A DNA stretch of 62,908 nucleotides, the filler included, from Choristocarpus tenellus KU-1152 (Eukaryota; Protista; Phaeophyceae), in NCBI GenBank assembly GCA_964200185.2. It is 6 parts of 6 records of this genome, joined end to end, with 100 filler letters (N's around TTAATTAATTAA, not from the genome) between each part and the next. Parts side by side here need not be neighbours in the genome. Positions count along the whole stretch, not along the records: positions 49,598 to 58,624 come from CAXNAD020004069.1; 5 more parts are not named here. One strand, given 5' to 3'. The position numbers were made by a program, and so were the translations under genes. A model generated the notes under the pieces. It searched no databases, was not told the origin of the DNA, and saw only the letters and a program-made list of their open reading frames with translations. Shown one piece after another: positions 4,432 to 58,624 of the stretch; within the stretch, counting starts at the first letter, position 1, and each line of letters begins with the position of its first letter.

Positions 4432-5308
4432 GATAGGGGAGGTTTTTCAAGGCTGGGAGTTATTTTCACAGATAGAGAATGGCGGTATGTGAGTCTGGGG
4501 GGGGAACTTGTGATACTGCCGTGTAGTGAGTGAAACTGGTTTTTGTACATGTCCGTGTATGTGCTCGCGTGCGTGAGTGCAAGCACGCATTCCTGTGTAT
4601 AATGTGTAATGTACTATTACTGATTAAGTATCACATTCTTTTGTTGATGCAACCTTGAGGTAGCACTACCCCGTACCTCTTATTGCTAGAGCAGTGATGC
4701 GGTCGGCACAGTGAATGGAGGAGAAGATGTTGGAAAATAGACATCTAGAGCTGGGGATGGCATCGCAAGATAAGAGACCAAGAGGATGAGGACCACATTT
4801 CGTCGATCTTAGTTTGTCGCCGTATTGGCGTTTATATGGTCTAACCCCACCACGCACCCCTCCATTATATTTTCGTTTCATGACAGTTACAGTTTCACTT
4901 GGTATTAAGTACTCGAGATTGTAGTTTATTGTGTAATTAGATTACTTTGCAAGGAGTGAACTCTTTGGCACGTAAAGCATCTCTTTTTTGTGCTCACCTG
5001 GTTGTTTTTTGTGTGGATTTCAACGGTTGCTTTTTATGCCTTGCCATCATGGCGGGGACAGGGGGGCAGAGCTTGAAGGTTTACATACACTGAATGAGGA
5101 GGCACTATCCCATTGCCCTGAAACCTAGCACATGCATGCACACCTACACGTACCCACTCACTAGTTCTTTCATCTGAGAGTAGCGTTGTCCTGAGGAGGC
5201 ATTTGGTAATTTCTACGTGATGGCACTTTGTGGAGCGCATTGGATACCATCAAGTGTATAAGTGCTCTGCTGCAGCACTAGTTCATACGCCTCTCTAAGT
5301 TGATGCTT

Positions 5309-49597: not shown

Positions 49598-49821
49598 TCT
49601 CTGACCCACTATATGAGTCTCTGACCCACTATATGAGTCTCTGACCCACTATATGAGTCTCTGACCCACTATATGAGTCTCTGACCCACTATATGAGTCT
49701 CTGACCCACTATATGAGTCTCTGAACCACTATATGAGTCTCTGACCCACTATATGAGTCTCTGACCCACTATATGAGTCTCTGACCCACTATATGAGTCT
49801 CTGACCCACTATATGAGTCTC
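49598..49821. repeat. 20-bp minisatellite (TCTCTGACCCACTATATGAG) x11, truncated by the contig start
   Basis: Head-to-tail copies with one variant (CTGAACCAC) and no spacers. Confidence 0.97.
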
Positions 49822-49900
49822 CAGTCCATCCAGGAATTCCTCTTTGCCTGTGTGTGTGACTAGACACCCGAAACTTTCCACCACAAAGGTGTATATATAC

Positions 49901-50172
49901 TATTTTGCCCACCGACATTTTGCAGATGTCATGGAGGGAATAAGAAGAAAACAGGGTAAAGAAGCAAACAAGCACAACAACATTGTATTTCTTACAGGAA
50001 AGTTCTTCAAATACACTTTGTGAATATCTGCAAAATGTCAATAAGGAATCCAAACAAAGGATTGTCTTGTGAGCAACAGATATCTGCTATTGTGTTTGTT
50101 ACTTTCCTTACCTTATGTTTTTCATTATTCCTTCCATGACAACATCCGCAAAATGTGATTGGGAACACAATA
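49901..50172. repeat. Imperfect long inverted repeat, degenerate fold-back element
   Basis: ACATTTTGCAGATGTCATGGAGGGAATAA..AAAACA..GGTAA pairs with TTACCTTATGTTTTT..TTATTCCTTCCATGACAACATCCGCAAAATGT. Confidence 0.75.
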
Positions 50173-52146
50173 AGACACATTATTCATTAACATCTGAAGT
50201 ATTGTATTGCTTTCTCCTGACAACCTTATCACCACAAAAAAAAGCCTGGGACCCCTCACACTAATGCAAAAACTAAAAATAAGAATTTCTTGTAATAATA
50301 ATATATATGGGTCAACTGGTGGTTTCTACTCTCAGACTAAGGTGAGACGTGAGGTAGTAGGAAGATATTAGTAGCTATAGTTACATTTAGTCTAAGGATT
50401 CAACCAACTCTACTTGTTGAATCGAAGCATATGAACAGCATGCAAGGTGAGGCGCACAAAGCATCTAGTGTGGTGGCGACAGTGAGGAAACACCAAGTGC
50501 CACAAGTTTCAAGTGAATTGAGCACATGTGTGTGGATGGCGAAGCCAATGAGCCAATAGGTCTTAATGCCCACCCTGACCACCCTTTGATTTTACAAATC
50601 AAACTGACAACACTTTCTATTGTATCTTATCACTGGGGAATGAACAAGACCAGAAAATATTAAATCTTAAACATGCTAAACGCTTGGACATGAATCTGTT
50701 TTTTTGCTGTGTTACCTGACCAATCTGCACAAGATTCCGACAAAAACCTTGAGTAGCAACATCACTACTTAGGTACACAGGGTCCCTCTACTAGCCACGC
50801 ACATCTGGGTCACAGTTTATAGAACCTCAATATAGTACACTATTACTGTAGAATATAATGAAAAACACTGCAGATGATGAGAAAAGACAAAGCGAGCACA
50901 CGTTTTGCACCTTGCTAAAAAACCCCATGAAATTGAGTACATACATACCTATCGCAATCATATGGATCAACCATAGGCAGCAATGTGTACAACAAGTCCA
51001 CCACAAGGTTGAGTATAATCAGATTAAAGAGACTTTTGGTTGTGTATCTTCAATATAGGTAGTATGGCTAGAGGTGTTTGGCACCCAAGGCGAGTTTCGT
51101 AAATCATAGAGCAGAACAAAGCCATCTCCAGAATTAGTTCCCGTAGAACCTTTCCACTGCTGTTGTGGGTGGACATGGGACTAATGTGACATACAAGAGT
51201 GTGTTTCTTCACTCTCCTGTTTTAAAAGTACCTCAAAAAGAAGCCAGGACTGGGTGGAGTGTTGTGGAACTTATGTCTGTGGTACTCCATTTTGACACCA
51301 GAACTATTACGTTAAAGAGACGACTAACACGCAAGAATCAACAATAGGTTGATGCCTGTGTACAGATAATAATTGTCTTGTCCAGGATGTCAGCACTGCT
51401 ATTCTTTTGAAGAGGGAAACCCTGGAAAAATAGTGTGTATGCTGTTACATACAGAACCCCATTTAGTACATACGACAAATGGCCAAGTAATTCAGTAAGG
51501 ATATGTAAAGGGTCGCATGTGAATCCACTTGTGCACATGCAAGTGGGTTCAGTGAACTTTCAACAGTCACTATACCACACACTCTACATCATATCCACCT
51601 GACCTAAAGGAAACTATTCCTCCAACATCCTCACATATTCTTGAAGGTGGTGGTGGTGGTGGTGGTGGTGGTGGCTCGCTGGTTCCCCTCAGCATTAGTC
51701 ATGAAGACACTCCTTGCATGTACACGTGCCTTAACGTGTATACAAAAAAATCATGCAGAATCTTGGACTGGGTTCAGGAGGACAGGAAGGGAGACTATGG
51801 TAAGAGTAAAGCATGTTCATATACCCCCTGAATTCTACCATGCAGCCAATAGATTTCCAATTATTTGTGTTTCCAAGGGGTGAGGGGGGGGGACATGATT
51901 GGTGAACATGTTCTATTGAGGTCATGACTTGGGTAGCATTGCTATTTCCTTGCACATTAGTGCATGTGAAGTAAATCATACAACAAAAAATGATAATGCC
52001 CTCATTCACAAAACGTAAGCCCTGGTTAAGGTTATCCTTTAGAAAAAATATGTTAGTCAACAAAGGGCATACTAATACTACACAGTAGGACTACTGCAGC
52101 TGTAAAAAAGTGGATTTCAGCCATGAGACACAGGGACCTACAGATA

Positions 52147-55100
52147 TCACAAGATGGCCCATTCCTCTTGCTGGTTCCGAAGACTTTGGTATATTTCTCC
52201 AACCCTCCTCATGAGAGATAGGGCTTCCCTCCTGCCAGACCCTGTCACCCCTTCTCTTTTCCTTGATATTGTCAATTCCTGAACCACATCGCCTGCTTCA
52301 GTTACAGCCTCCCCAATCAAGTGTAAACCCCGTGCTGACTTTGCAGCAGCATCAGCCCTCCTGAGCACCTCCTTGCCACCCCGCCTCCCTTTGCTTGCAG
52401 GAAAGCCCTCACTGCCCACCTCACTCATTGAGAGCGATAGTACCCTGTTCAGCAATGCCTCACGCACAAGTACTGCCATTACTTCATGCGAGCAGGACAC
52501 ATAGAGATCCACTGTCCGAAGCCCTGCTTCCCCCACCTCTATCTGAGCCCCAGCTTTTGACGATTCCCGTGCTCTCACCAGGGCAACCTGCCCTGCCACC
52601 CTCAAGGCAAATTCAGTGTACCCCCGTCCCCATGTCACACCTCCTGCAGTCTCCTCTACATCTCCTCTATGTTGGAGACCCTGAGCACCCCCACTTGCAT
52701 GTGCATTAGCTGCTTCTCCATCCTGGCTACCACGGGCAGCCCCGTTTTTTAATGCAGAAGCTTCCTGTCCCAAAATCAGAGGCAGTAATGAGTTGATTTG
52801 ACCAGTAAGGCAAGCCAGGCGTAGACATACAGTGCCCCAGGATGAAGAGAAAGGTCGTGCCAGTGCAGGATCATTCCCAAAGCCCTTCCCTGCCACTGCT
52901 CCTTCATGACGACTAAATGTGTCTCCAATGGTCATGTCAGGTCCACAGAAGCACTCTCCCCGCCCCAAGGCTGATGCCCTAACAGCAGCATCACTGCCTG
53001 GAAAAGGCATCACAGGGGAACCCCAATCAAGAAGGTCAAAGCGTTTGCTGCCAAGTTCTATACACAAGCCACTGGCTGCACTAAGCCCACCATCCTTGTG
53101 AAAATGTCTGCCATCATTAGGAGCATTCCTGTTGCTTGAAGAGTAGTCTTGGGCATCATTGCCAAAGCGCAGTTGAAGCCACAATTTCACTTCCACAGGT
53201 TGAGGGGAGGGGAGGGGGAACGATGAGGATGATGTCCACTCTTTCCCTCGTTGTAGTGCAGTTAGCGGGACTGGGGTGCACACTGACCATGCTTGACCCT
53301 CCCCTTCACCTGGTCGACCACGAGTTGACATGATGCTCATAGCAATACACCAACGTCCTTCACAACCAGACCATGAATGTGGGAGAGACCCTCGACCTCG
53401 GCCTCGGAGCCACAGTCCCACAGTAAGCCTCACCCGGATTTCTTGACCTACTCCATTGACAGGTAATCCCACACTGACCCTATTTAGAAATTCATTGTCA
53501 GCACTCATGGATATCTTGTGGCTGATACCCCCAGCCCTCACCCAGTCAAAGCTGTTTCCATGACCTTTCCTGCCAAGCCTCCAGCTGCCCTCCAGGCGAG
53601 ACCATAGGAGGGCAGGAAGGAGTTCTGAGGCGTCCTTGAGGGCCCGAATTTCACTGTCCCTTCTAAAAGATTCAGAGGAGAGGGCTGAACACTGATTGCC
53701 AATAGCAGACAGTCGCTGAAGCTGTCCCTTAACGCGGCGTTCAACCCCAGCACTACCCCCAACCCTCACTCCACCCTTGCCGGTATCCAAGGTCCACCCT
53801 TCAAGCTCTTCCATGGACCTGGGGGAACGGAAACCCCTAAGCTTCCCTCTTTTTGAAAGGATCAAAATCAGGGTGCTTGATGGGACTGCCATTGCTGTGT
53901 CTCCTACTGCTGCATCTGTCCCTCCATTGACCTTTGACCTCACTCTTGCGTCAGTAAGGTTGTTGACATTGGCAGCTACAGGAGGGGGGACAGACATACT
54001 TCCGGCTAAACAGCCTGAGCTTCTCCTTGAGAATTCATCTGGGTCCATGAATTGGATTGAAGTCACAGTTACAGTGTCACAAGGAAGTGGCAAGCGTATT
54101 GGGCACAAAGCTGCTCCCCAATTAGAAGTGATGCATCTACTACCCCCTTTCTCACTGTGCAATCTTTTGTCTTGAATTGCAGTACCAGTGGTAAGAGGGG
54201 TGGCAAACGTGGCTCCCATGTGACAGTGCACAAGAAATCCTGGAACAGAGCAAACAGAGTCGACGGCGAACGGGAGATTGACCCGTACCTCACGCAACAT
54301 ATCGGAGGGCATCCTTGCTGCTCTGAATGACCCTTCTGCTACAGTATCTATTTGATTTGCTTCCATCGATCGCTCGAGATTTGCTAAATGGATTTGCAAT
54401 ACTGCCCCTGCAACCCCTATCATCAGCAAGCCCATGGCACCACCCTCCAGACAGAGAAAGGGCAGGATGCTAATGATCGGCTGACCAAGGTTAGCAAGGG
54501 TTCCTCCCACAACACCTGGACACCGCCGAAGTGGGCTCCAGCGGACTATCCCGTCCGAGTCACCAACCAGGACCACTGCTGGCGGGGATACATCCCCCTC
54601 ACTAGTAGCCAGTGGAAAGGGTGCGGATAGTGCAAGGCCCACACCAAACATAGCACAGAATACCTCTCGAGGCAACGGAAAGCACTTTCCATCCCCATCT
54701 GCCAATCCAGCGAGGGCGTCATTATCGCTCATCCATACCACTGATACCATTGTCGGCGCCGCTCCATCTAGCCCTTCGAGCACATCGACTCTATCTCCCG
54801 CATGGTCCCCCAGCTTCACGTCGTCGGCTAGTGCATACAAAGCCGTGCGATCGAGTATCCCGGCAGCGGCTGCCCTCCATCCGGAAGACACGGCCACGCT
54901 CCTAACGCCAGGGTGCACACACACCTCCCAGCACTTCCTCGATGCACGAATCACAAGCCCTCCCCAGGAATCATGACAACCTCCTGAATCCCTCACGTCG
55001 CTGGTTGGGGTTGCTGACTGAGTAGATGGGTCGACCAAGGTGGGTGCCAAGTCATCGTAAATATCTACCATGTCGTCTCGCTTACGCCTACGTCCTCGGC

Positions 55101-55548
55101 ACCCTTCACTGTGCGAAGCAGCATCAGGTGCTGCAGCACGCCTATCCTTGCGACCTCGCTGCCCCTCGCCCATATCTTGATCACGAAAAATGTCTTTGAA
55201 AGGCAGAGCGTGCAGGCCCCCATCCCTACAGGCCACAACGCACAGCAGTCCTTGCCCTACGAACTTGGCCGGAAGCCCCGCAAAGTCTACCACTGGCGAT
55301 TCGAACTCGATCACACGGAGAAGACGGCGTCCCCGGAAGATATGCAGAATGCAAGGTTGAGCTCGAGCTCCAAATAACACATCAGTTAGAGGAGGATGAA
55401 CCTGGTGGGTTTCAGAAAATCTCTCGACACAGAATGCCCGGACCAAGGCTGGGGGCGTGACGGCAATCGTGGTATTCACCGCAAGGAGCGCCGAAAAGGG
55501 TTGAGTAGATTTCATATTTTCCTCTGAAGTCCCCACCATCATCAACAC
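52147..55548 (-). CDS. FAAP100: Fanconi anaemia core complex-associated protein 100-like, intronless (first ATG at 55542)
   Basis: Uninterrupted 1133-codon ORF with blocks collinear to recalled human FAAP100 from the N-terminal beta-propeller to the C-terminal YxxLR helix (see finding). Confidence 0.75.
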   Translation of the reverse strand: MLMMVGTSEENMKSTQPFSALLAVNTTIAVTPPALVRAFCVERFSETHQVHPPLTDVLFGARAQPCILHIFRGRRLLRVIEFESPVVDFAGLPAKFVGQGLLCVVACRDGGLHALPFKDIFRDQDMGEGQRGRKDRRAAAPDAASHSEGCRGRRRKRDDMVDIYDDLAPTLVDPSTQSATPTSDVRDSGGCHDSWGGLVIRASRKCWEVCVHPGVRSVAVSSGWRAAAAGILDRTALYALADDVKLGDHAGDRVDVLEGLDGAAPTMVSVVWMSDNDALAGLADGDGKCFPLPREVFCAMFGVGLALSAPFPLATSEGDVSPPAVVLVGDSDGIVRWSPLRRCPGVVGGTLANLGQPIISILPFLCLEGGAMGLLMIGVAGAVLQIHLANLERSMEANQIDTVAEGSFRAARMPSDMLREVRVNLPFAVDSVCSVPGFLVHCHMGATFATPLTTGTAIQDKRLHSEKGGSRCITSNWGAALCPIRLPLPCDTVTVTSIQFMDPDEFSRRSSGCLAGSMSVPPPVAANVNNLTDARVRSKVNGGTDAAVGDTAMAVPSSTLILILSKRGKLRGFRSPRSMEELEGWTLDTGKGGVRVGGSAGVERRVKGQLQRLSAIGNQCSALSSESFRRDSEIRALKDASELLPALLWSRLEGSWRLGRKGHGNSFDWVRAGGISHKISMSADNEFLNRVSVGLPVNGVGQEIRVRLTVGLWLRGRGRGSLPHSWSGCEGRWCIAMSIMSTRGRPGEGEGQAWSVCTPVPLTALQRGKEWTSSSSFPLPSPQPVEVKLWLQLRFGNDAQDYSSSNRNAPNDGRHFHKDGGLSAASGLCIELGSKRFDLLDWGSPVMPFPGSDAAVRASALGRGECFCGPDMTIGDTFSRHEGAVAGKGFGNDPALARPFSSSWGTVCLRLACLTGQINSLLPLILGQEASALKNGAARGSQDGEAANAHASGGAQGLQHRGDVEETAGGVTWGRGYTEFALRVAGQVALVRARESSKAGAQIEVGEAGLRTVDLYVSCSHEVMAVLVREALLNRVLSLSMSEVGSEGFPASKGRRGGKEVLRRADAAAKSARGLHLIGEAVTEAGDVVQELTISRKREGVTGSGRREALSLMRRVGEIYQSLRNQQEEWAIL

Positions 55549-56377
55549 AACTGTGGTTGTGGAAGAGACGGGGAGAAAAAAGGTTTGGGTTTGGTACTAT
55601 TTGACTACTACTACTACTATTGGTGTTACTACTAAGTGTTGAGTGTAGTAATCACATTGTATTTTCCACTATATCCAAATAAGTATTTTCCTATGTAACA
55701 TTATATTCATATACCATCAACCCTATCAATCCACTTGGCATTCTGACCTTCAAGGTGACCTGGCGACTCATCTTTCAGGTATGAGTGCATTACCAACGCA
55801 TTAGGTGTGAGGTGCAATCTACAGCCATGGTAGTCACTGACCCAAAGGAAATATGTTCTTGCCTTGGATATATATGGTGCTTTTATCCTGCTATAACGTT
55901 TTGATTACAACTACGAACCCCAGTGTTAAAAGCGTCGTTCGTACACTCCAGGAGCGTTTCCTACAATTTATGGCAAGGATAAGGATCAAAGAGCTATCAA
56001 TCAATACTGAGCCGCCACCACGACTACCTTTGGTGCTGGCTGGCATAGCACTTGTGCTATTGGTTGGCCATGCAAACATGATGCAAGTCTTTGGGTAACC
56101 ACTTTCGATGGCCCTATGCGAACCTTTGATAGCAGCCAGACTTTCGTGACTAAGGGTGGTCTAGCACAAGGTTTGCTGAAGCGACAGTTCCGTTACTTGT
56201 TGGGGCAAAGGAAGGGCCTGTTTGACGCTCAAGTGTACACTTGGAGGTGTTGCTTCATCTTAGAGAAGATTTGCACTTTTGTACCGTTCTTGCCTCTGAT
56301 GTAATCAATCCTCGAGCAAGTAACTTGTGTTTAGTGTGCAATGTCAAGGTGTATGTTGTGTGGTCGTCACTATCATC

Positions 56378-56590
56378 GACCCAAAGTATCTGGGGGGGNN
56401 NNNNNNNNCGCATATGTGGTGGGGGGGGGGGGGGGGGGGTCTACACTAGGGTGTCCATTTGGGGCAGAATCAGGAAAAATGCATTTACATTATCCATCCG
56501 ACGTATACAACCAAATCGCCCAAAAATCCACGACATGAAAAATTGACCCCGAATGGGCAGCCATCACCCACCCCCCCAATACTTTGAGTC
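56378..56590. mobile_element. MITE family B copy with an internal N gap
   Basis: GACCCAAAGTATCTGGGG...CCCCAATACTTTGAGTC; reverse-complement similar to 57091-57271. Confidence 0.85.
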
Positions 56591-57090
56591 ATTTCTTGAT
56601 ATTATCCTTTTGACTTTTGGCTGGAATGGATTGCTTTGAAATAAGGGTATAATTAGAAGATTTCTAGCAGAAATTTATGTGAAAACAACACCCATGAGTC
56701 AAAACCATATTCATTCATCCTCATCAACCCTAGTTTCCCTTCTCCCTGGCTAGGGTAAGTCTGTAGTGGAGGGCTACATGGAATTGGGCGGAAAATAGGG
56801 AAGCATTTTTTCTTGGTGTATGTAGCCCCAGTTGATTATCAAAGTTTCTCATATTTGCCAACTATGAACAGATAGCTTCACATGGTTTTCAGCAATTAAG
56901 AGAGCAAGTCGAATAATAGCTATATGTTGCCCTCCTTGTTGATGCAGACAATGCACATCACGGACACATTTGTGCCATCCCAAATGATCAACTTCAAAAT
57001 ATTTAGATATGTTAGAATTCCAAATCTTTCCTTCATTGTGCACTATTCCAAATAGCAACCCTCCCTGCTCTCACTGTTGACCATACTTGT

Positions 57091-57271
57091 GGCCAAAAGT
57101 ATCTGGGGGGGGTGGCGACTGTCCATTTATTTGGGGCCAATTTTTTCATGTCGCGAATTTGGGGCGATTTGGTTGCATACGTCGGATGGGAAATGTAAGT
57201 ACACCTTTGCTGGTTACATCCCAAATGGAAACCCTGGTGTAGACCCCCCCCCCTCCTCAGATACTTGGATC
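57091..57271. mobile_element. MITE family B copy
   Basis: GGCCAAAAGTATCTGGGG...CAGATACTTGGATC with TGT duplicated on both sides. Confidence 0.87.
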
Positions 57272-58379
57272 TGTGACGCTTTTTTGCTGTCTAGTGATAA
57301 GTTGAGGGGGCAATAGTCTGCAAGGCTTCAGGATCAATTTTCTTATCGCAGTAGTGTAGGTTGATCTGGTCCCTTTGACTCTCAGGGAGAACACCATTTC
57401 TGGAGAATACTTTTGGGGTTATTTGGATCTCATTACTTGCAAGCCTTACTGGGTTGTTGGCTCGTGATACTTACTCGTGTGGGGGAGGCAAAAAAATGTG
57501 TTCCTCGGAATTTCAAGGTGTGTGCTCCACTGATGTGAAGGAGTACACTCGACTCATATCGGCAAGTGTGTGACCCACTGAAATTCTGCAACACCATGTG
57601 CTCAACCAATGGGTTTATGTGCCACCAACCCTATAAGACTGAGAGCTTACAGTTACCACATGAATAGAAGTACAAGGTCCCTACCCTTGCAACAAGACAC
57701 ACTTATTTCACCCCCACTAATAGCAGTGTTACCACATCCTTTGTACACACTGGAGAGACCTCAAACCTGTCCACTTCTCTCCCATGCAAGCATAGGAGAC
57801 AATGCTGGGATGATTTTGTATTGTTTCACTACATCACAGTGTGACTACGTCTAGAAATAGGCTTACCTGAAATGAAATAACACCTGTGGTAGAAGGGTCT
57901 AGGGTTTACCTTGGAGATACATCAACTATCTGTATTTTGATGTTATAGTATACTGTATTAGGGCAACAAAGAGAGAGGCGTGGGCATGCCTTCTGTTTCA
58001 TAAAGTTCAATTTCTAGAGATGACTTATGTGCAAAGGAATAAAAAGAAAAAATGCAAGGATTACATTATAGGACGTACTCTACTTGTTGTGAACGTAGCT
58101 TTGGACCTGCTCTCAATTTGTGTTACTCAGTCCCTAAGTTTATTTTGTTGATTTCATCAACTTGAGGGTCAGATAAAGTGAAAGCACAAATAACAGCAGT
58201 CGTGCATTGCCATTTCAATAGCGCTTGGAAGACTGATGGGAACTGATTATTCATGTGGCACAATTAAAGATCCATATAGTCAGTGTAACCACTAAACCTG
58301 GTATGGGTGCCCTTGCATTTCTCTTAGGGAGAGTACTACCTGAATCATATATTCATCTGGTGTCAAGTACACAAGCTAT

Positions 58380-58624
58380 GGCTCAAATTATCTGTGGGGA
58401 GGGGGGAGGGATCTACACCAGGGTGTCCAATTGCGTCCTGACCAGGAGAGTGAACTTGCATTATGACTCAAAGTATCTGGGGGTGTGTGTGGCGACTGTC
58501 CATTCGGGGCCCAGTTTTCCATTTCGCGATTTTTGGGTGATTTGATCGCATGCGTCGGATGGATAATGTAAGTACACTTCTCCTGGTTAGGGCCTGAATG
58601 GACATGCTGGTGTAGAGCGCTCCC
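58380..58624. mobile_element. Two nested MITE family B copies in opposite orientation
   Basis: The host copy starts GGCTCAAATTATCTG at 58380 and is interrupted at 58465 by GACTCAAAGTATCTGGGG, which runs to the contig end. Confidence 0.8.

What the first reader, a model, noticed from the sequence alone, without database searches (positions are those of the whole stretch)
52147..55548. FAAP100-like Fanconi anaemia core-complex gene in an alga, as a single 3.4-kb exon
Seen: an uninterrupted 1133-codon ORF. From my recollection of human FAAP100, blocks match in order (ORF vs human): LLCVVACRDGGLHAL vs LLYALCARRGLYCL; FPLPREVFCAMFG vs FTLEDALFGLLFG; AVVLVGDSDG vs PVVLCGLPDG; LANLGQPIISI vs LHHLEEPVIFI; LLMIGVAGAVLQI vs LVAFGHHGRMLAI; LCPIRL vs LCPASL; LILSKRGKL vs LALSAKGRL; RRVKGQLQRLSAIGNQCSAL vs QKIKELLSGIGNISERVSFL; GLCIELGSKRFDLL vs GVCLPLSRHTVDML; EIYQSLR vs QVYRQLR. 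Established: FAAP100 forms the FANCB-FANCL-FAAP100 catalytic module and is mostly described in animals. Inference: this stramenopile may keep an ancient FA E3-ligase module that has gone unrecognised. The lack of introns, while neighbouring genes are intron-dense, also suggests retroposition or unusual gene history.
Basis: partly seen in the sequence, partly recalled or inferred. Interest (0 to 1): 0.8.

Follow-up and report, generated by a model that had tools for sequence, protein, structure and literature searches.

The report
FAAP100-like scaffold gene in brown algae
A brown-alga gene with no recognisable sequence family folds, over its whole C-terminal half, like human FAAP100, a scaffold of the Fanconi anaemia DNA-repair ubiquitin ligase that a 2025 paper calls an orphan with recognisable homologs only in vertebrates.

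Summary
The ORF is real: 52147-55548 on the minus strand, 1131 aa from the first ATG (55542). It is one exon and sits on a 9-kb contig of a brown-alga assembly. HMMER finds relatives only in brown algae and three sister classes (Chrysoparadoxa, Phaeothamnion, Tribonema). No Pfam family, including FANCAA and the FANCB families, and no PDB sequence matches.

Three other searches point to FAAP100:
- Protein-language-model features give FAAP100 clusters as the nearest (0.95).
- An AlphaFold2 model of residues 556-1131 (pLDDT 70.6) shows a long helix, beta-sandwich, alpha/beta domain and helical bundle. Its best PDB match is chain P/Q of the human FA core complex, which I read as FAAP100 (Foldseek E 1.8e-10; VIA Z 13.0 against 9.7 for the next of 48,161 chains). 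The match is collinear with chain residues 447-866.
- The three best shape matches in the ESM Atlas are all FAAP100 clusters.

The presumed FANCB chain scores far lower. The N-terminal propeller, the partners (FANCB, FANCL) and expression were not tested.

The single-exon state is shared by Discosporangium, Ectocarpus and Ascophyllum, so it is old and not a recent retrocopy. dN/dS among Ectocarpus species is 0.33-0.43.

Verdict: probably a very divergent FAAP100 orthologue. The call rests on fold and not on sequence statistics.

The parts
52147..55548 (-). Whole open reading frame as listed, from the GTG, stop codon 52147-52149 included
52150..55542 (-). Most likely coding sequence, 1131 aa from the first ATG, single exon (P0001)
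   Evidence: the same product is called in assembly GCA_964200185.2, and the N-terminus aligns with full-length homologs
53818..55542 (-). Residues 1-575: mostly beta-strand N-terminal half with low-complexity inserts. Presumed beta-propeller (WD40-like), not modelled with confidence
   Evidence: strands only, pLDDT under 50 for most of it; nearest feature clusters are all beta-propeller families, 0.79-0.83, a lead only
53581..53754 (-). Residues 597-654: one long helix, the counterpart of the coiled-coil helix of FAAP100. Together with the preceding 556-596 it is the best-conserved stretch of the family
   Evidence: H42-99 of the model, pLDDT about 90 over model residues 51-70, falling towards its C-terminal end; alignment starts at model 41 = chain 447; conservation 0.50-0.60 against 0.27-0.37 in the other domains and 0.11 in the linker
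53038..53526 (-). Residues 673-835: beta-sandwich domain
   Evidence: strands E118-E280; also matches ApaG, GAE and Ig-like sandwiches
52492..52992 (-). Residues 851-1017: alpha/beta domain with two disordered inserts
   Evidence: H296-H382, E348-356, E422-462
52153..52485 (-). Residues 1020-1130: C-terminal three-helix bundle
   Evidence: H465-489, H500-542, H546-575

Best explanation
The gene encodes a very divergent orthologue of FAAP100, the non-catalytic scaffold of the FANCB-FANCL-FAAP100 hub of the Fanconi anaemia core ubiquitin ligase. It is inherited vertically in brown algae and their sister classes.

[quoted passage not shown] This is the same order as the C-terminal four of the five FAAP100/FANCB domains. 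The model's best match among solved chains is a chain of the human FA core complex that I read as FAAP100, over chain residues 447-866. That stretch is the Pfam FANCAA region.

Inferred: the N-terminal half is the WD40-type propeller. The long helix pairs with a FANCB-like partner into a coiled coil that docks the RWD domains of a FANCL-type RING ligase. The complex supports monoubiquitination of FANCD2/FANCI during repair of DNA interstrand crosslinks, or in meiotic recombination control. The strongest conservation in the family falls on the linker and the long helix, the part that carries FANCL in the human complex. This fits a conserved protein-docking role.
For: (1) Language-model features of the whole protein: the four best sets of clusters are FAAP100 (PF15146), score 0.94-0.95, 217-224 of 256 features shared. 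FANCB clusters score 0.88. (2) AlphaFold2 without templates, residues 556-1131, 30-sequence alignment: mean pLDDT 70.6, pTM 0.61. (3) Foldseek against PDB: 7kzp_Q and 7kzp_P (human FA core complex) E 1.8e-10 and 7.7e-10 over about 580 columns. The next unrelated hit (ApaG) is 5.8e-5 and BBS9 is 3.4e-4. (4) VIA-align: 7kzp_P Z 13.0, 337 residues aligned, model 41-555 to chain 447-866. It is top both among Foldseek's 1000 and among all 48,161 PDB representatives, where the next is Z 9.7 on a 76-residue helical hairpin. The chicken FA core chain 9a0j_P gives Z 8.6. (5) ESM Atlas shape search: rows 1-3 are all FAAP100 clusters, TM by query 0.47-0.49 over 353-363 residues. The next row is 0.37. (6) The five-domain order of FAAP100/FANCB (WD40, long helix, beta-sandwich, alpha/beta, helical bundle) and FANCL docking on the coiled coil are described in 10.1101/854158 and PMC7467173. 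FANCAA covers the C-terminal 432 residues of human FAAP100 (PMC12126235). (7) The gene is real and constrained: 25 relatives, a tree congruent with the species tree, and dN/dS 0.33-0.43 among Ectocarpus species.
Against: No sequence-level link. Pfam FANCAA and the three FANCB families give nothing, at E up to 10 for 9 family members and E up to 1 for P0001 and 10 further relatives. Profiles of 9, 21 and 30 sequences find no FA protein in the PDB at E up to 10. An exhaustive HMMER profile search of 1.84 billion representatives finds only brown algae and three sister classes.

TM-scores stay under 0.5 and the rmsd is 9.9 A, so the domains match but their mutual orientation does not. The model contains long helices, for which Z around 13 can arise from common arrangements, according to the tool's own note.

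The N-terminal half could not be modelled. Fold search gives entry titles only. That chains P/Q are FAAP100 is my reading, from numbering up to 866 (human FANCB has 859 residues, from memory) and from the authors' 'P100' shorthand. FANCB, FANCL, FANCD2/I and UBE2T were not looked for in this genome, and expression was not tested.
Confidence: 0.65

Rival explanations
1. It belongs to the FANCB/FAAP100 structural superfamily but is not the FAAP100 orthologue. It could be the FANCB counterpart, or a single undivided paralogue that pairs with itself in place of the animal FANCB-FAAP100 heterodimer.
For: [quoted passage not shown] FANCB clusters also appear in the feature search at 0.88, as does an oomycete cluster of 1277-aa proteins in which some members carry FANCB_N, at 0.90. 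The exhaustive search found no second, paralogous family in brown algae.
Against: Every ranking puts FAAP100 first. Foldseek gives 1.8e-10 against 1e-2 (probability 0.35) for 7kzq_O, presumably FANCB. No second FA-core chain type appears among the top 50 of the exhaustive VIA search. Atlas shape rows 1-3 are all FAAP100. Human FANCB and FAAP100 share no detectable sequence similarity (PMC12126235), so failing to find a paralogue by HMMER says nothing. The self-pairing fold gave no verdict.
Confidence: 0.17
2. It is an unrelated scaffold that merely shares the widespread propeller / coiled coil / GAE-like beta-sandwich / platform-like alpha/beta / helical layout. That layout is also seen in BBSome subunits BBS2/7/9 and, in part, in coat appendage domains. 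The protein would work outside DNA repair.
For: BBS9 (6vbu_9: Foldseek 3.4e-4, VIA Z 8.0), the COPI gamma appendage (9qpq_H, Z 9.2) and AP2 alpha ears (Z 7.5-8.0) appear among the matches. PTHB1 clusters score 0.80 in the feature search. There is no sequence-level tie to any FA family.
Against: These matches are six orders of magnitude weaker in Foldseek and 4-5 Z units lower. They cover one or two domains, or have rmsd 14 A, whereas the FAAP100 match is collinear over four domains. BBS and coat families have sensitive Pfam models, and none hits.
Confidence: 0.13
3. It is a decaying or non-functional retrocopy, or a contaminant contig.
For: A single 3.4-kb exon on a short 9-kb contig with repeat-rich flanks.
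Against: The frame is intact over 1131 codons. Full-length intact single-exon orthologues exist in Discosporangium, Ectocarpus (three species) and Ascophyllum. dN/dS is 0.33-0.43. The nearest relative is Discosporangium and the tree follows brown-alga phylogeny.
Confidence: 0.03

Closest known systems
Human FAAP100 (FA core complex-associated protein 100; Pfam PF15146 FANCAA; chains P/Q of PDB 7KZP)
   Same: The C-terminal half has the same four domains in the same order: long helix, beta-sandwich, alpha/beta, helical bundle. It is the best structural match in the PDB and in the ESM Atlas, and the nearest in language-model features. The N-terminal half is beta-rich, as expected for the WD40 domain.
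   Different: About 14% identity in the structural alignment and no HMM match to FANCAA. It is 250 residues longer (1131 against 881), with low-complexity and disordered inserts. Relative domain orientation differs (rmsd 9.9 A). Partners were not shown.
FANCB (Pfam PF28327, PF28312, PF28318)
   Same: Same five-domain layout as FAAP100, so also the same as this protein. It appears lower in the feature search (0.88).
   Different: A much weaker structural match (Foldseek E about 1e-2 for the presumed FANCB chain; not in the top 50 by VIA). No Pfam hit.
BBSome subunits BBS9/PTHB1, BBS2, BBS7
   Same: Propeller, coiled coil, GAE-type beta-sandwich, platform-type alpha/beta and a helical end in the same order. 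These are weak structural matches (Z 8.0).
   Different: Matches are far weaker and geometrically poor (rmsd 14 A). No PTHB1/BBS Pfam hit. Different cellular process (ciliary trafficking).
Appendage ('ear') domains of COPI gamma and AP2 alpha
   Same: A beta-sandwich followed by an alpha/beta platform (Z 7.5-9.2 over about 200 residues).
   Different: Covers only two of the domains. No long helix, helical bundle or propeller. No sequence relation.

Membership tests
FAAP100 (Pfam PF15146 FANCAA / IPR029251) | Significant match to the FANCAA profile HMM | tested here: not met
   hmmscan against Pfam-A gives 0 families: P0001 at E up to 1, all 9 members of A1 at E up to 10, and 10 further relatives at E up to 1.
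FAAP100 (Pfam PF15146 FANCAA / IPR029251) | C-terminal domain order: long coiled-coil helix, beta-sandwich, alpha/beta domain, helical bundle (10.1101/854158; PMC7467173) | tested here: met
   AF2 model of residues 556-1131, pLDDT 70.6: H42-99, strands 118-280, alpha/beta 296-462, helices 465-575. Collinear alignment to 7kzp_P residues 447-866, Z 13.0.
FAAP100 (Pfam PF15146 FANCAA / IPR029251) | N-terminal WD40 beta-propeller | tested here: inconclusive
   The full-length model is poor (pLDDT 36), with only beta-strands predicted in 1-575. Feature search of residues 1-555 returns only beta-propeller families, but at 0.79-0.83, which is chance level.
FAAP100 (Pfam PF15146 FANCAA / IPR029251) | FAAP100, and not its paralogue FANCB or another family, is the best structural match | tested here: met
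   Foldseek 1.8e-10 against 1e-2 for 7kzq_O and 5.8e-5 for the best non-FA chain. Atlas shape rows 1-3 are all FAAP100. In the exhaustive VIA search it is top by 3.3 Z units. Caveat: the identity of chains P/Q is inferred from residue numbering and the 'P100' nomenclature.
FAAP100 (Pfam PF15146 FANCAA / IPR029251) | Forms a heterodimer with FANCB and carries FANCL on the coiled coil | not testable with these tools
   No brown-alga FANCB or FANCL sequence could be obtained. A self-pairing fold of residues 591-1025 gave no verdict.
FAAP100 (Pfam PF15146 FANCAA / IPR029251) | Co-occurrence with FANCL, UBE2T and FANCD2/FANCI in the same genome | not testable with these tools
   Only this 9-kb contig is available, and no eukaryote genome collection can be searched with a family profile here. 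The literature search found nothing on the FA pathway in brown algae.
FANCB (Pfam PF28327, PF28312, PF28318) | Match to the FANCB_N, FANCB_middle or FANCB_C profiles, or FANCB as best structural match | tested here: not met
   No Pfam hit. FANCB clusters score 0.88 against 0.95 for FAAP100. The presumed FANCB chain has Foldseek E 1e-2, probability 0.35.
BBS2/BBS7/BBS9 (PTHB1) family | Match to the PTHB1/BBS profiles, or a BBS subunit as best structural match | tested here: not met
   No Pfam hit. 6vbu_9: Foldseek 3.4e-4, VIA Z 8.0, rmsd 14.4 A. Feature score 0.80.

The most novel reading that the evidence does not exclude
Brown algae and their sister classes keep a single FANCB/FAAP100-type scaffold that pairs with itself. 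This would be the undivided ancestral form of the hub that later duplicated into FANCB and FAAP100 in the animal lineage, and it would put the FANCL-docking hub of the Fanconi anaemia ligase at or near the last eukaryotic common ancestor. A milder and much more likely version is that this is a true FAAP100 orthologue. FAAP100 would then not be the orphan with recognisable homologs only in vertebrates that recent literature describes, but an ancient eukaryotic protein hidden by fast sequence divergence.
Probability: 0.1. Interest if true: 0.8.

Novelty: new member of a known kind. Interest (0 to 1): 0.62.

Why it matters
FAAP100 became a bona fide Fanconi anaemia gene in 2025. [quoted passage not shown] A 2014 survey lists no FAAP100 or FANCB in Arabidopsis, yeasts, fly or worm (PMC4132730). 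A structurally recognisable FAAP100 in brown algae, a lineage that separated from animals near the root of eukaryotes, would mean that the FANCB-FANCL-FAAP100 catalytic hub is ancient and is missed because it evolves fast. It would name an uncharacterised, conserved gene (Ectocarpus Esi_0010_0048). It would also offer a genetically tractable multicellular alga in which to test what the hub does outside animals, in crosslink repair and in meiotic crossover control. Finally, it shows that this family needs fold-level searches: ordinary HMM searches fail even with an exhaustive database.

Tried and rejected
- Sequence routes all failed to reach FAAP100:
  - Pfam scans of 19 family members.
  - phmmer and three profiles against PDB sequences. 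The only hits were chance coiled-coil matches such as SIKE1 at E 0.025.
  - The exhaustive 1.84-billion-protein profile search.
  - Two further word-index searches with alignments A2 and A3.
- Full-length AlphaFold2 with 9 sequences was unusable (pLDDT 36) and was not searched.
- Feature search of the N-terminal half gave only generic propeller leads.
- Complex prediction, two copies of residues 591-1025: score 0.01, 'no answer'. It is neither support nor evidence against self-pairing.
- I could not obtain a human FAAP100 sequence from any tool.
- Rejected readings: a contaminant or a decaying retrocopy (intact orthologues, congruent tree, dN/dS below 0.5), and a BBS or coat-appendage relative (much weaker matches, no Pfam hit).
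Full report
**What is there**

The piece 49598-58624 is one whole 9027-bp contig, CAXNAD020004069.1 of assembly GCA_964200185.2. On its minus strand lies one uninterrupted frame, 52147..55548, of 1133 codons counted from a GTG. The first ATG is at 55542 and gives 1131 aa (P0001). The public annotation calls the same product, and its N-terminus aligns with full-length homologs. G+C is 52-57% inside the frame and about 39-48% in the flanks. No other gene is called on the contig, and the flanks hold only short ORFs and repeats.

**Relatives and gene history**

The word-index search found eight other proteins, the named ones all from brown algae: Discosporangium (44% identity), several Ectocarpus species, and unnamed Logan assemblies. 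An exhaustive HMMER profile search of 1.84 billion cluster representatives found 25 proteins at E up to 0.001. The named ones are brown algae (Nemacystus, Ascophyllum, Scytosiphon) plus Chrysoparadoxa australica, Phaeothamnion confervicola and Tribonema minus, which are sister classes of brown algae. Nothing outside this group was reached.

A maximum-likelihood tree puts the window's protein next to Discosporangium (support 100). This pair is sister to all other brown algae, and the three other classes lie outside. This is a quick tree, the outgroup branches are long, and the root is at the midpoint. The pattern is vertical inheritance. The source is probably a relative of Discosporangium, which is an inference.

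The gene is one uninterrupted ORF in other genomes as well:
- Discosporangium: L002 1396..5097, 1233 codons.
- Ectocarpus siliculosus: L003 5107..8868, 1253 aa from an ATG.
- Ascophyllum: L004 6001..9486.
- Two further Ectocarpus species, whose frames stay open 313-331 codons upstream of the annotated start.

The single-exon state therefore predates the deepest split sampled within brown algae, and it is not a recent retrocopy. Nei-Gojobori dN/dS among three Ectocarpus species is 0.33-0.43 over about 940 codons. The gene is under purifying selection but evolves fast.

**Sequence-level tests of the FAAP100 idea were negative**

- Pfam-A, which includes PF15146 FANCAA and the three FANCB families, gives nothing for P0001 at E up to 1, for the nine members of alignment A1 at E up to 10, or for ten further relatives at E up to 1.
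- phmmer and profiles of 9, 21 and 30 sequences find no Fanconi protein among PDB sequences at E up to 10. The only hits are chance coiled-coil matches.
- Two more word-index searches with alignments added nothing.

By the usual definition, a Pfam match, the protein is not a recognisable FANCAA member.

**Fold-level and feature-level tests were positive and concordant**

1. Language-model features. The ESM Atlas search with the whole protein returns FAAP100 clusters as the four best family sets (0.94-0.95, 217-224 of 256 features shared). Next come an oomycete cluster partly carrying FANCB_N (0.90), FANCB clusters (0.88) and PTHB1/BBS9 (0.80). The tool states that about 1 in 100 shuffled proteins reaches 0.95, so this is a lead and not proof.

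2. The structural model. AlphaFold2 without templates on the full length with 9 sequences failed (pLDDT 36). On residues 556-1131 with a 30-sequence alignment (A3) it gave mean pLDDT 70.6 and pTM 0.61. The predicted elements, in protein numbering, are:
   - two strands at 558-572;
   - one long helix, 597-654;
   - a beta-sandwich, 673-835;
   - an alpha/beta domain, 851-1017, with two disordered inserts;
   - a three-helix bundle, 1020-1130.

3. Foldseek against 350,542 PDB chains. Chains Q and P of 7KZP, the human FA core complex, come first (E 1.8e-10 and 7.7e-10, about 580 alignment columns, 14% identity). The best unrelated chain is ApaG at 5.8e-5, BBS9 is at 3.4e-4, and 7kzq_O, presumably FANCB, is at 1e-2 with probability 0.35.

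4. VIA-align. 7kzp_P gets Z 13.0 (337 residues, rmsd 9.9 A), aligning model 41-555 with chain 447-866. In the exhaustive comparison with 48,161 representative chains it is again first. The runner-up has Z 9.7 and is a 76-residue helical hairpin matching only the terminal bundle. The chicken FA core chain 9a0j_P scores Z 8.6.

5. ESM Atlas shape search. The first three rows are all FAAP100 clusters (TM by query 0.47-0.49, 353-363 residues aligned). The fourth row drops to 0.37.

The literature gives the reference architecture. [quoted passage not shown] FANCL docks its RWD1 and RWD2 domains on the FANCB-FAAP100 coiled coil (10.1101/854158; also PMC7467173). The Pfam FANCAA region is the C-terminal 432 residues of human FAAP100 (PMC12126235), about residues 450-881. 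This coincides with the chain range 447-866 matched by the model.

**Caveats on the structural evidence**

- Fold search prints entry titles, not molecule names. I take chains P/Q as FAAP100 for three reasons: the numbering runs to 866 while human FANCB has 859 residues (from memory); the authors abbreviate FAAP100 as 'P100'; and the Atlas shape search, which does carry names, independently says FAAP100.
- TM-scores are below 0.5 and the rmsd is large. The individual domains and their order agree, but their relative orientation does not. This is expected for a monomer model compared with a chain inside a 1.1-MDa complex, but it also weakens the statistic.
- The tool warns that models rich in long helices can reach Z of about 13 by common arrangement. 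Here the match spans a sandwich and an alpha/beta domain as well, and it stands 3.3 Z units clear of the next chain.
- As far as I know, the AlphaFold2 weights predate the first FA core structures, and no templates were used. The fold is therefore unlikely to be recalled from the matching entry.

**What was not shown**

- The N-terminal half (1-575) is beta-rich in the poor model. Its nearest feature clusters are all propeller families, but at chance-level scores. A WD40 propeller is likely but unproven.
- No FANCB, FANCL, FANCD2/I or UBE2T from brown algae could be obtained. The existence of the module rests on inference.
- A self-pairing fold of residues 591-1025 gave 'no answer' and is not evidence either way.

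**Mechanism proposed**

Residues 556-654 are the best-conserved part of the family: the last strands, a GKGGVR-containing linker and the first half of the long helix. Mean identity to the query there is 0.50-0.60, against 0.27-0.37 in the other domains. In the human complex the equivalent helix forms the coiled coil that carries FANCL. I therefore propose the following, with about 65% confidence for FAAP100 orthology and somewhat less for the function. The protein is the scaffold that pairs through helix and sandwich with a FANCB-like partner. It dimerises through the sandwich and alpha/beta domains. It presents a FANCL-type RING ligase to FANCD2/FANCI.

The rivals are:
- A FANCB counterpart, or an undivided single paralogue (0.17).
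- An unrelated scaffold that shares the propeller / coiled-coil / GAE-like / platform-like layout of BBS2/7/9 and coat appendages (0.13).
- A dead retrocopy or a contaminant (0.03).

**Comparison with what is known, and novelty**

A 2014 survey lists no FAAP100 or FANCB in Arabidopsis, yeasts, Drosophila or C. elegans (PMC4132730). The 2025 paper establishing FAAP100 as an FA gene calls it an orphan with 'recognizable homologs only in vertebrates', though it also mentions a few FAAP100-like proteins carrying portions of FANCAA in invertebrates and some plants (PMC12126235). Literature searches found nothing on the FA core complex in brown algae. The Ectocarpus orthologue Esi_0010_0048 is annotated only as hypothetical.

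I file the protein as a probable new, very divergent member of a known kind. The claim rests on fold and not on sequence statistics. It becomes firm only with a profile-profile hit and with the partners in hand.

Noticed in passing
L003 5107-8868; L005 and L006 upstream of 1501; L002 1396-5097: The public gene models of the orthologues are N-terminally truncated: Ectocarpus 941-955 aa and Discosporangium 1056 aa. The frames stay open 177-331 codons further upstream, and in E. siliculosus an ATG at 5107 gives 1253 aa that align with full-length relatives.
   Followed up: yes
window 49598-49861: The contig begins with a tandem array of a 20-nt unit (at least 13 units, 99-100% identical), running to the contig edge. 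It is possibly a satellite, and it may explain why the assembly broke there.
   Followed up: no
window 56427-56578, 57129-57256, 58402-58624: The flank 5' of the gene holds dispersed copies, direct and inverted, of a roughly 100-150-nt repeat, 75-82% alike, with G/C homopolymer runs. There is a short run of N near 56400. It is probably a small non-autonomous repeat element, and no coding potential was seen.
   Followed up: partly
window about 55602-55620: A short (TAG)n microsatellite, read on the gene's strand, lies about 60-80 nt upstream of the ATG at 55542.
   Followed up: no
model me2e22b2218f3 (P0001 residues 556-1131): After FAAP100, the recurrent weaker structural matches are BBSome subunits (BBS9) and the COPI gamma and AP2 alpha appendages. 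BBS2/7/9 have the same propeller / coiled coil / sandwich / platform / helical order as FANCB and FAAP100. This may hint at a deep common origin of these scaffolds.
   Followed up: no
Protein-atlas search result for P0001: A cluster of 78 proteins of about 1277 aa, mostly from oomycetes, is among the nearest in feature space (0.90), and 13% of its members carry Pfam FANCB_N. Stramenopiles may therefore also hold a FANCB-like gene.
   Followed up: no
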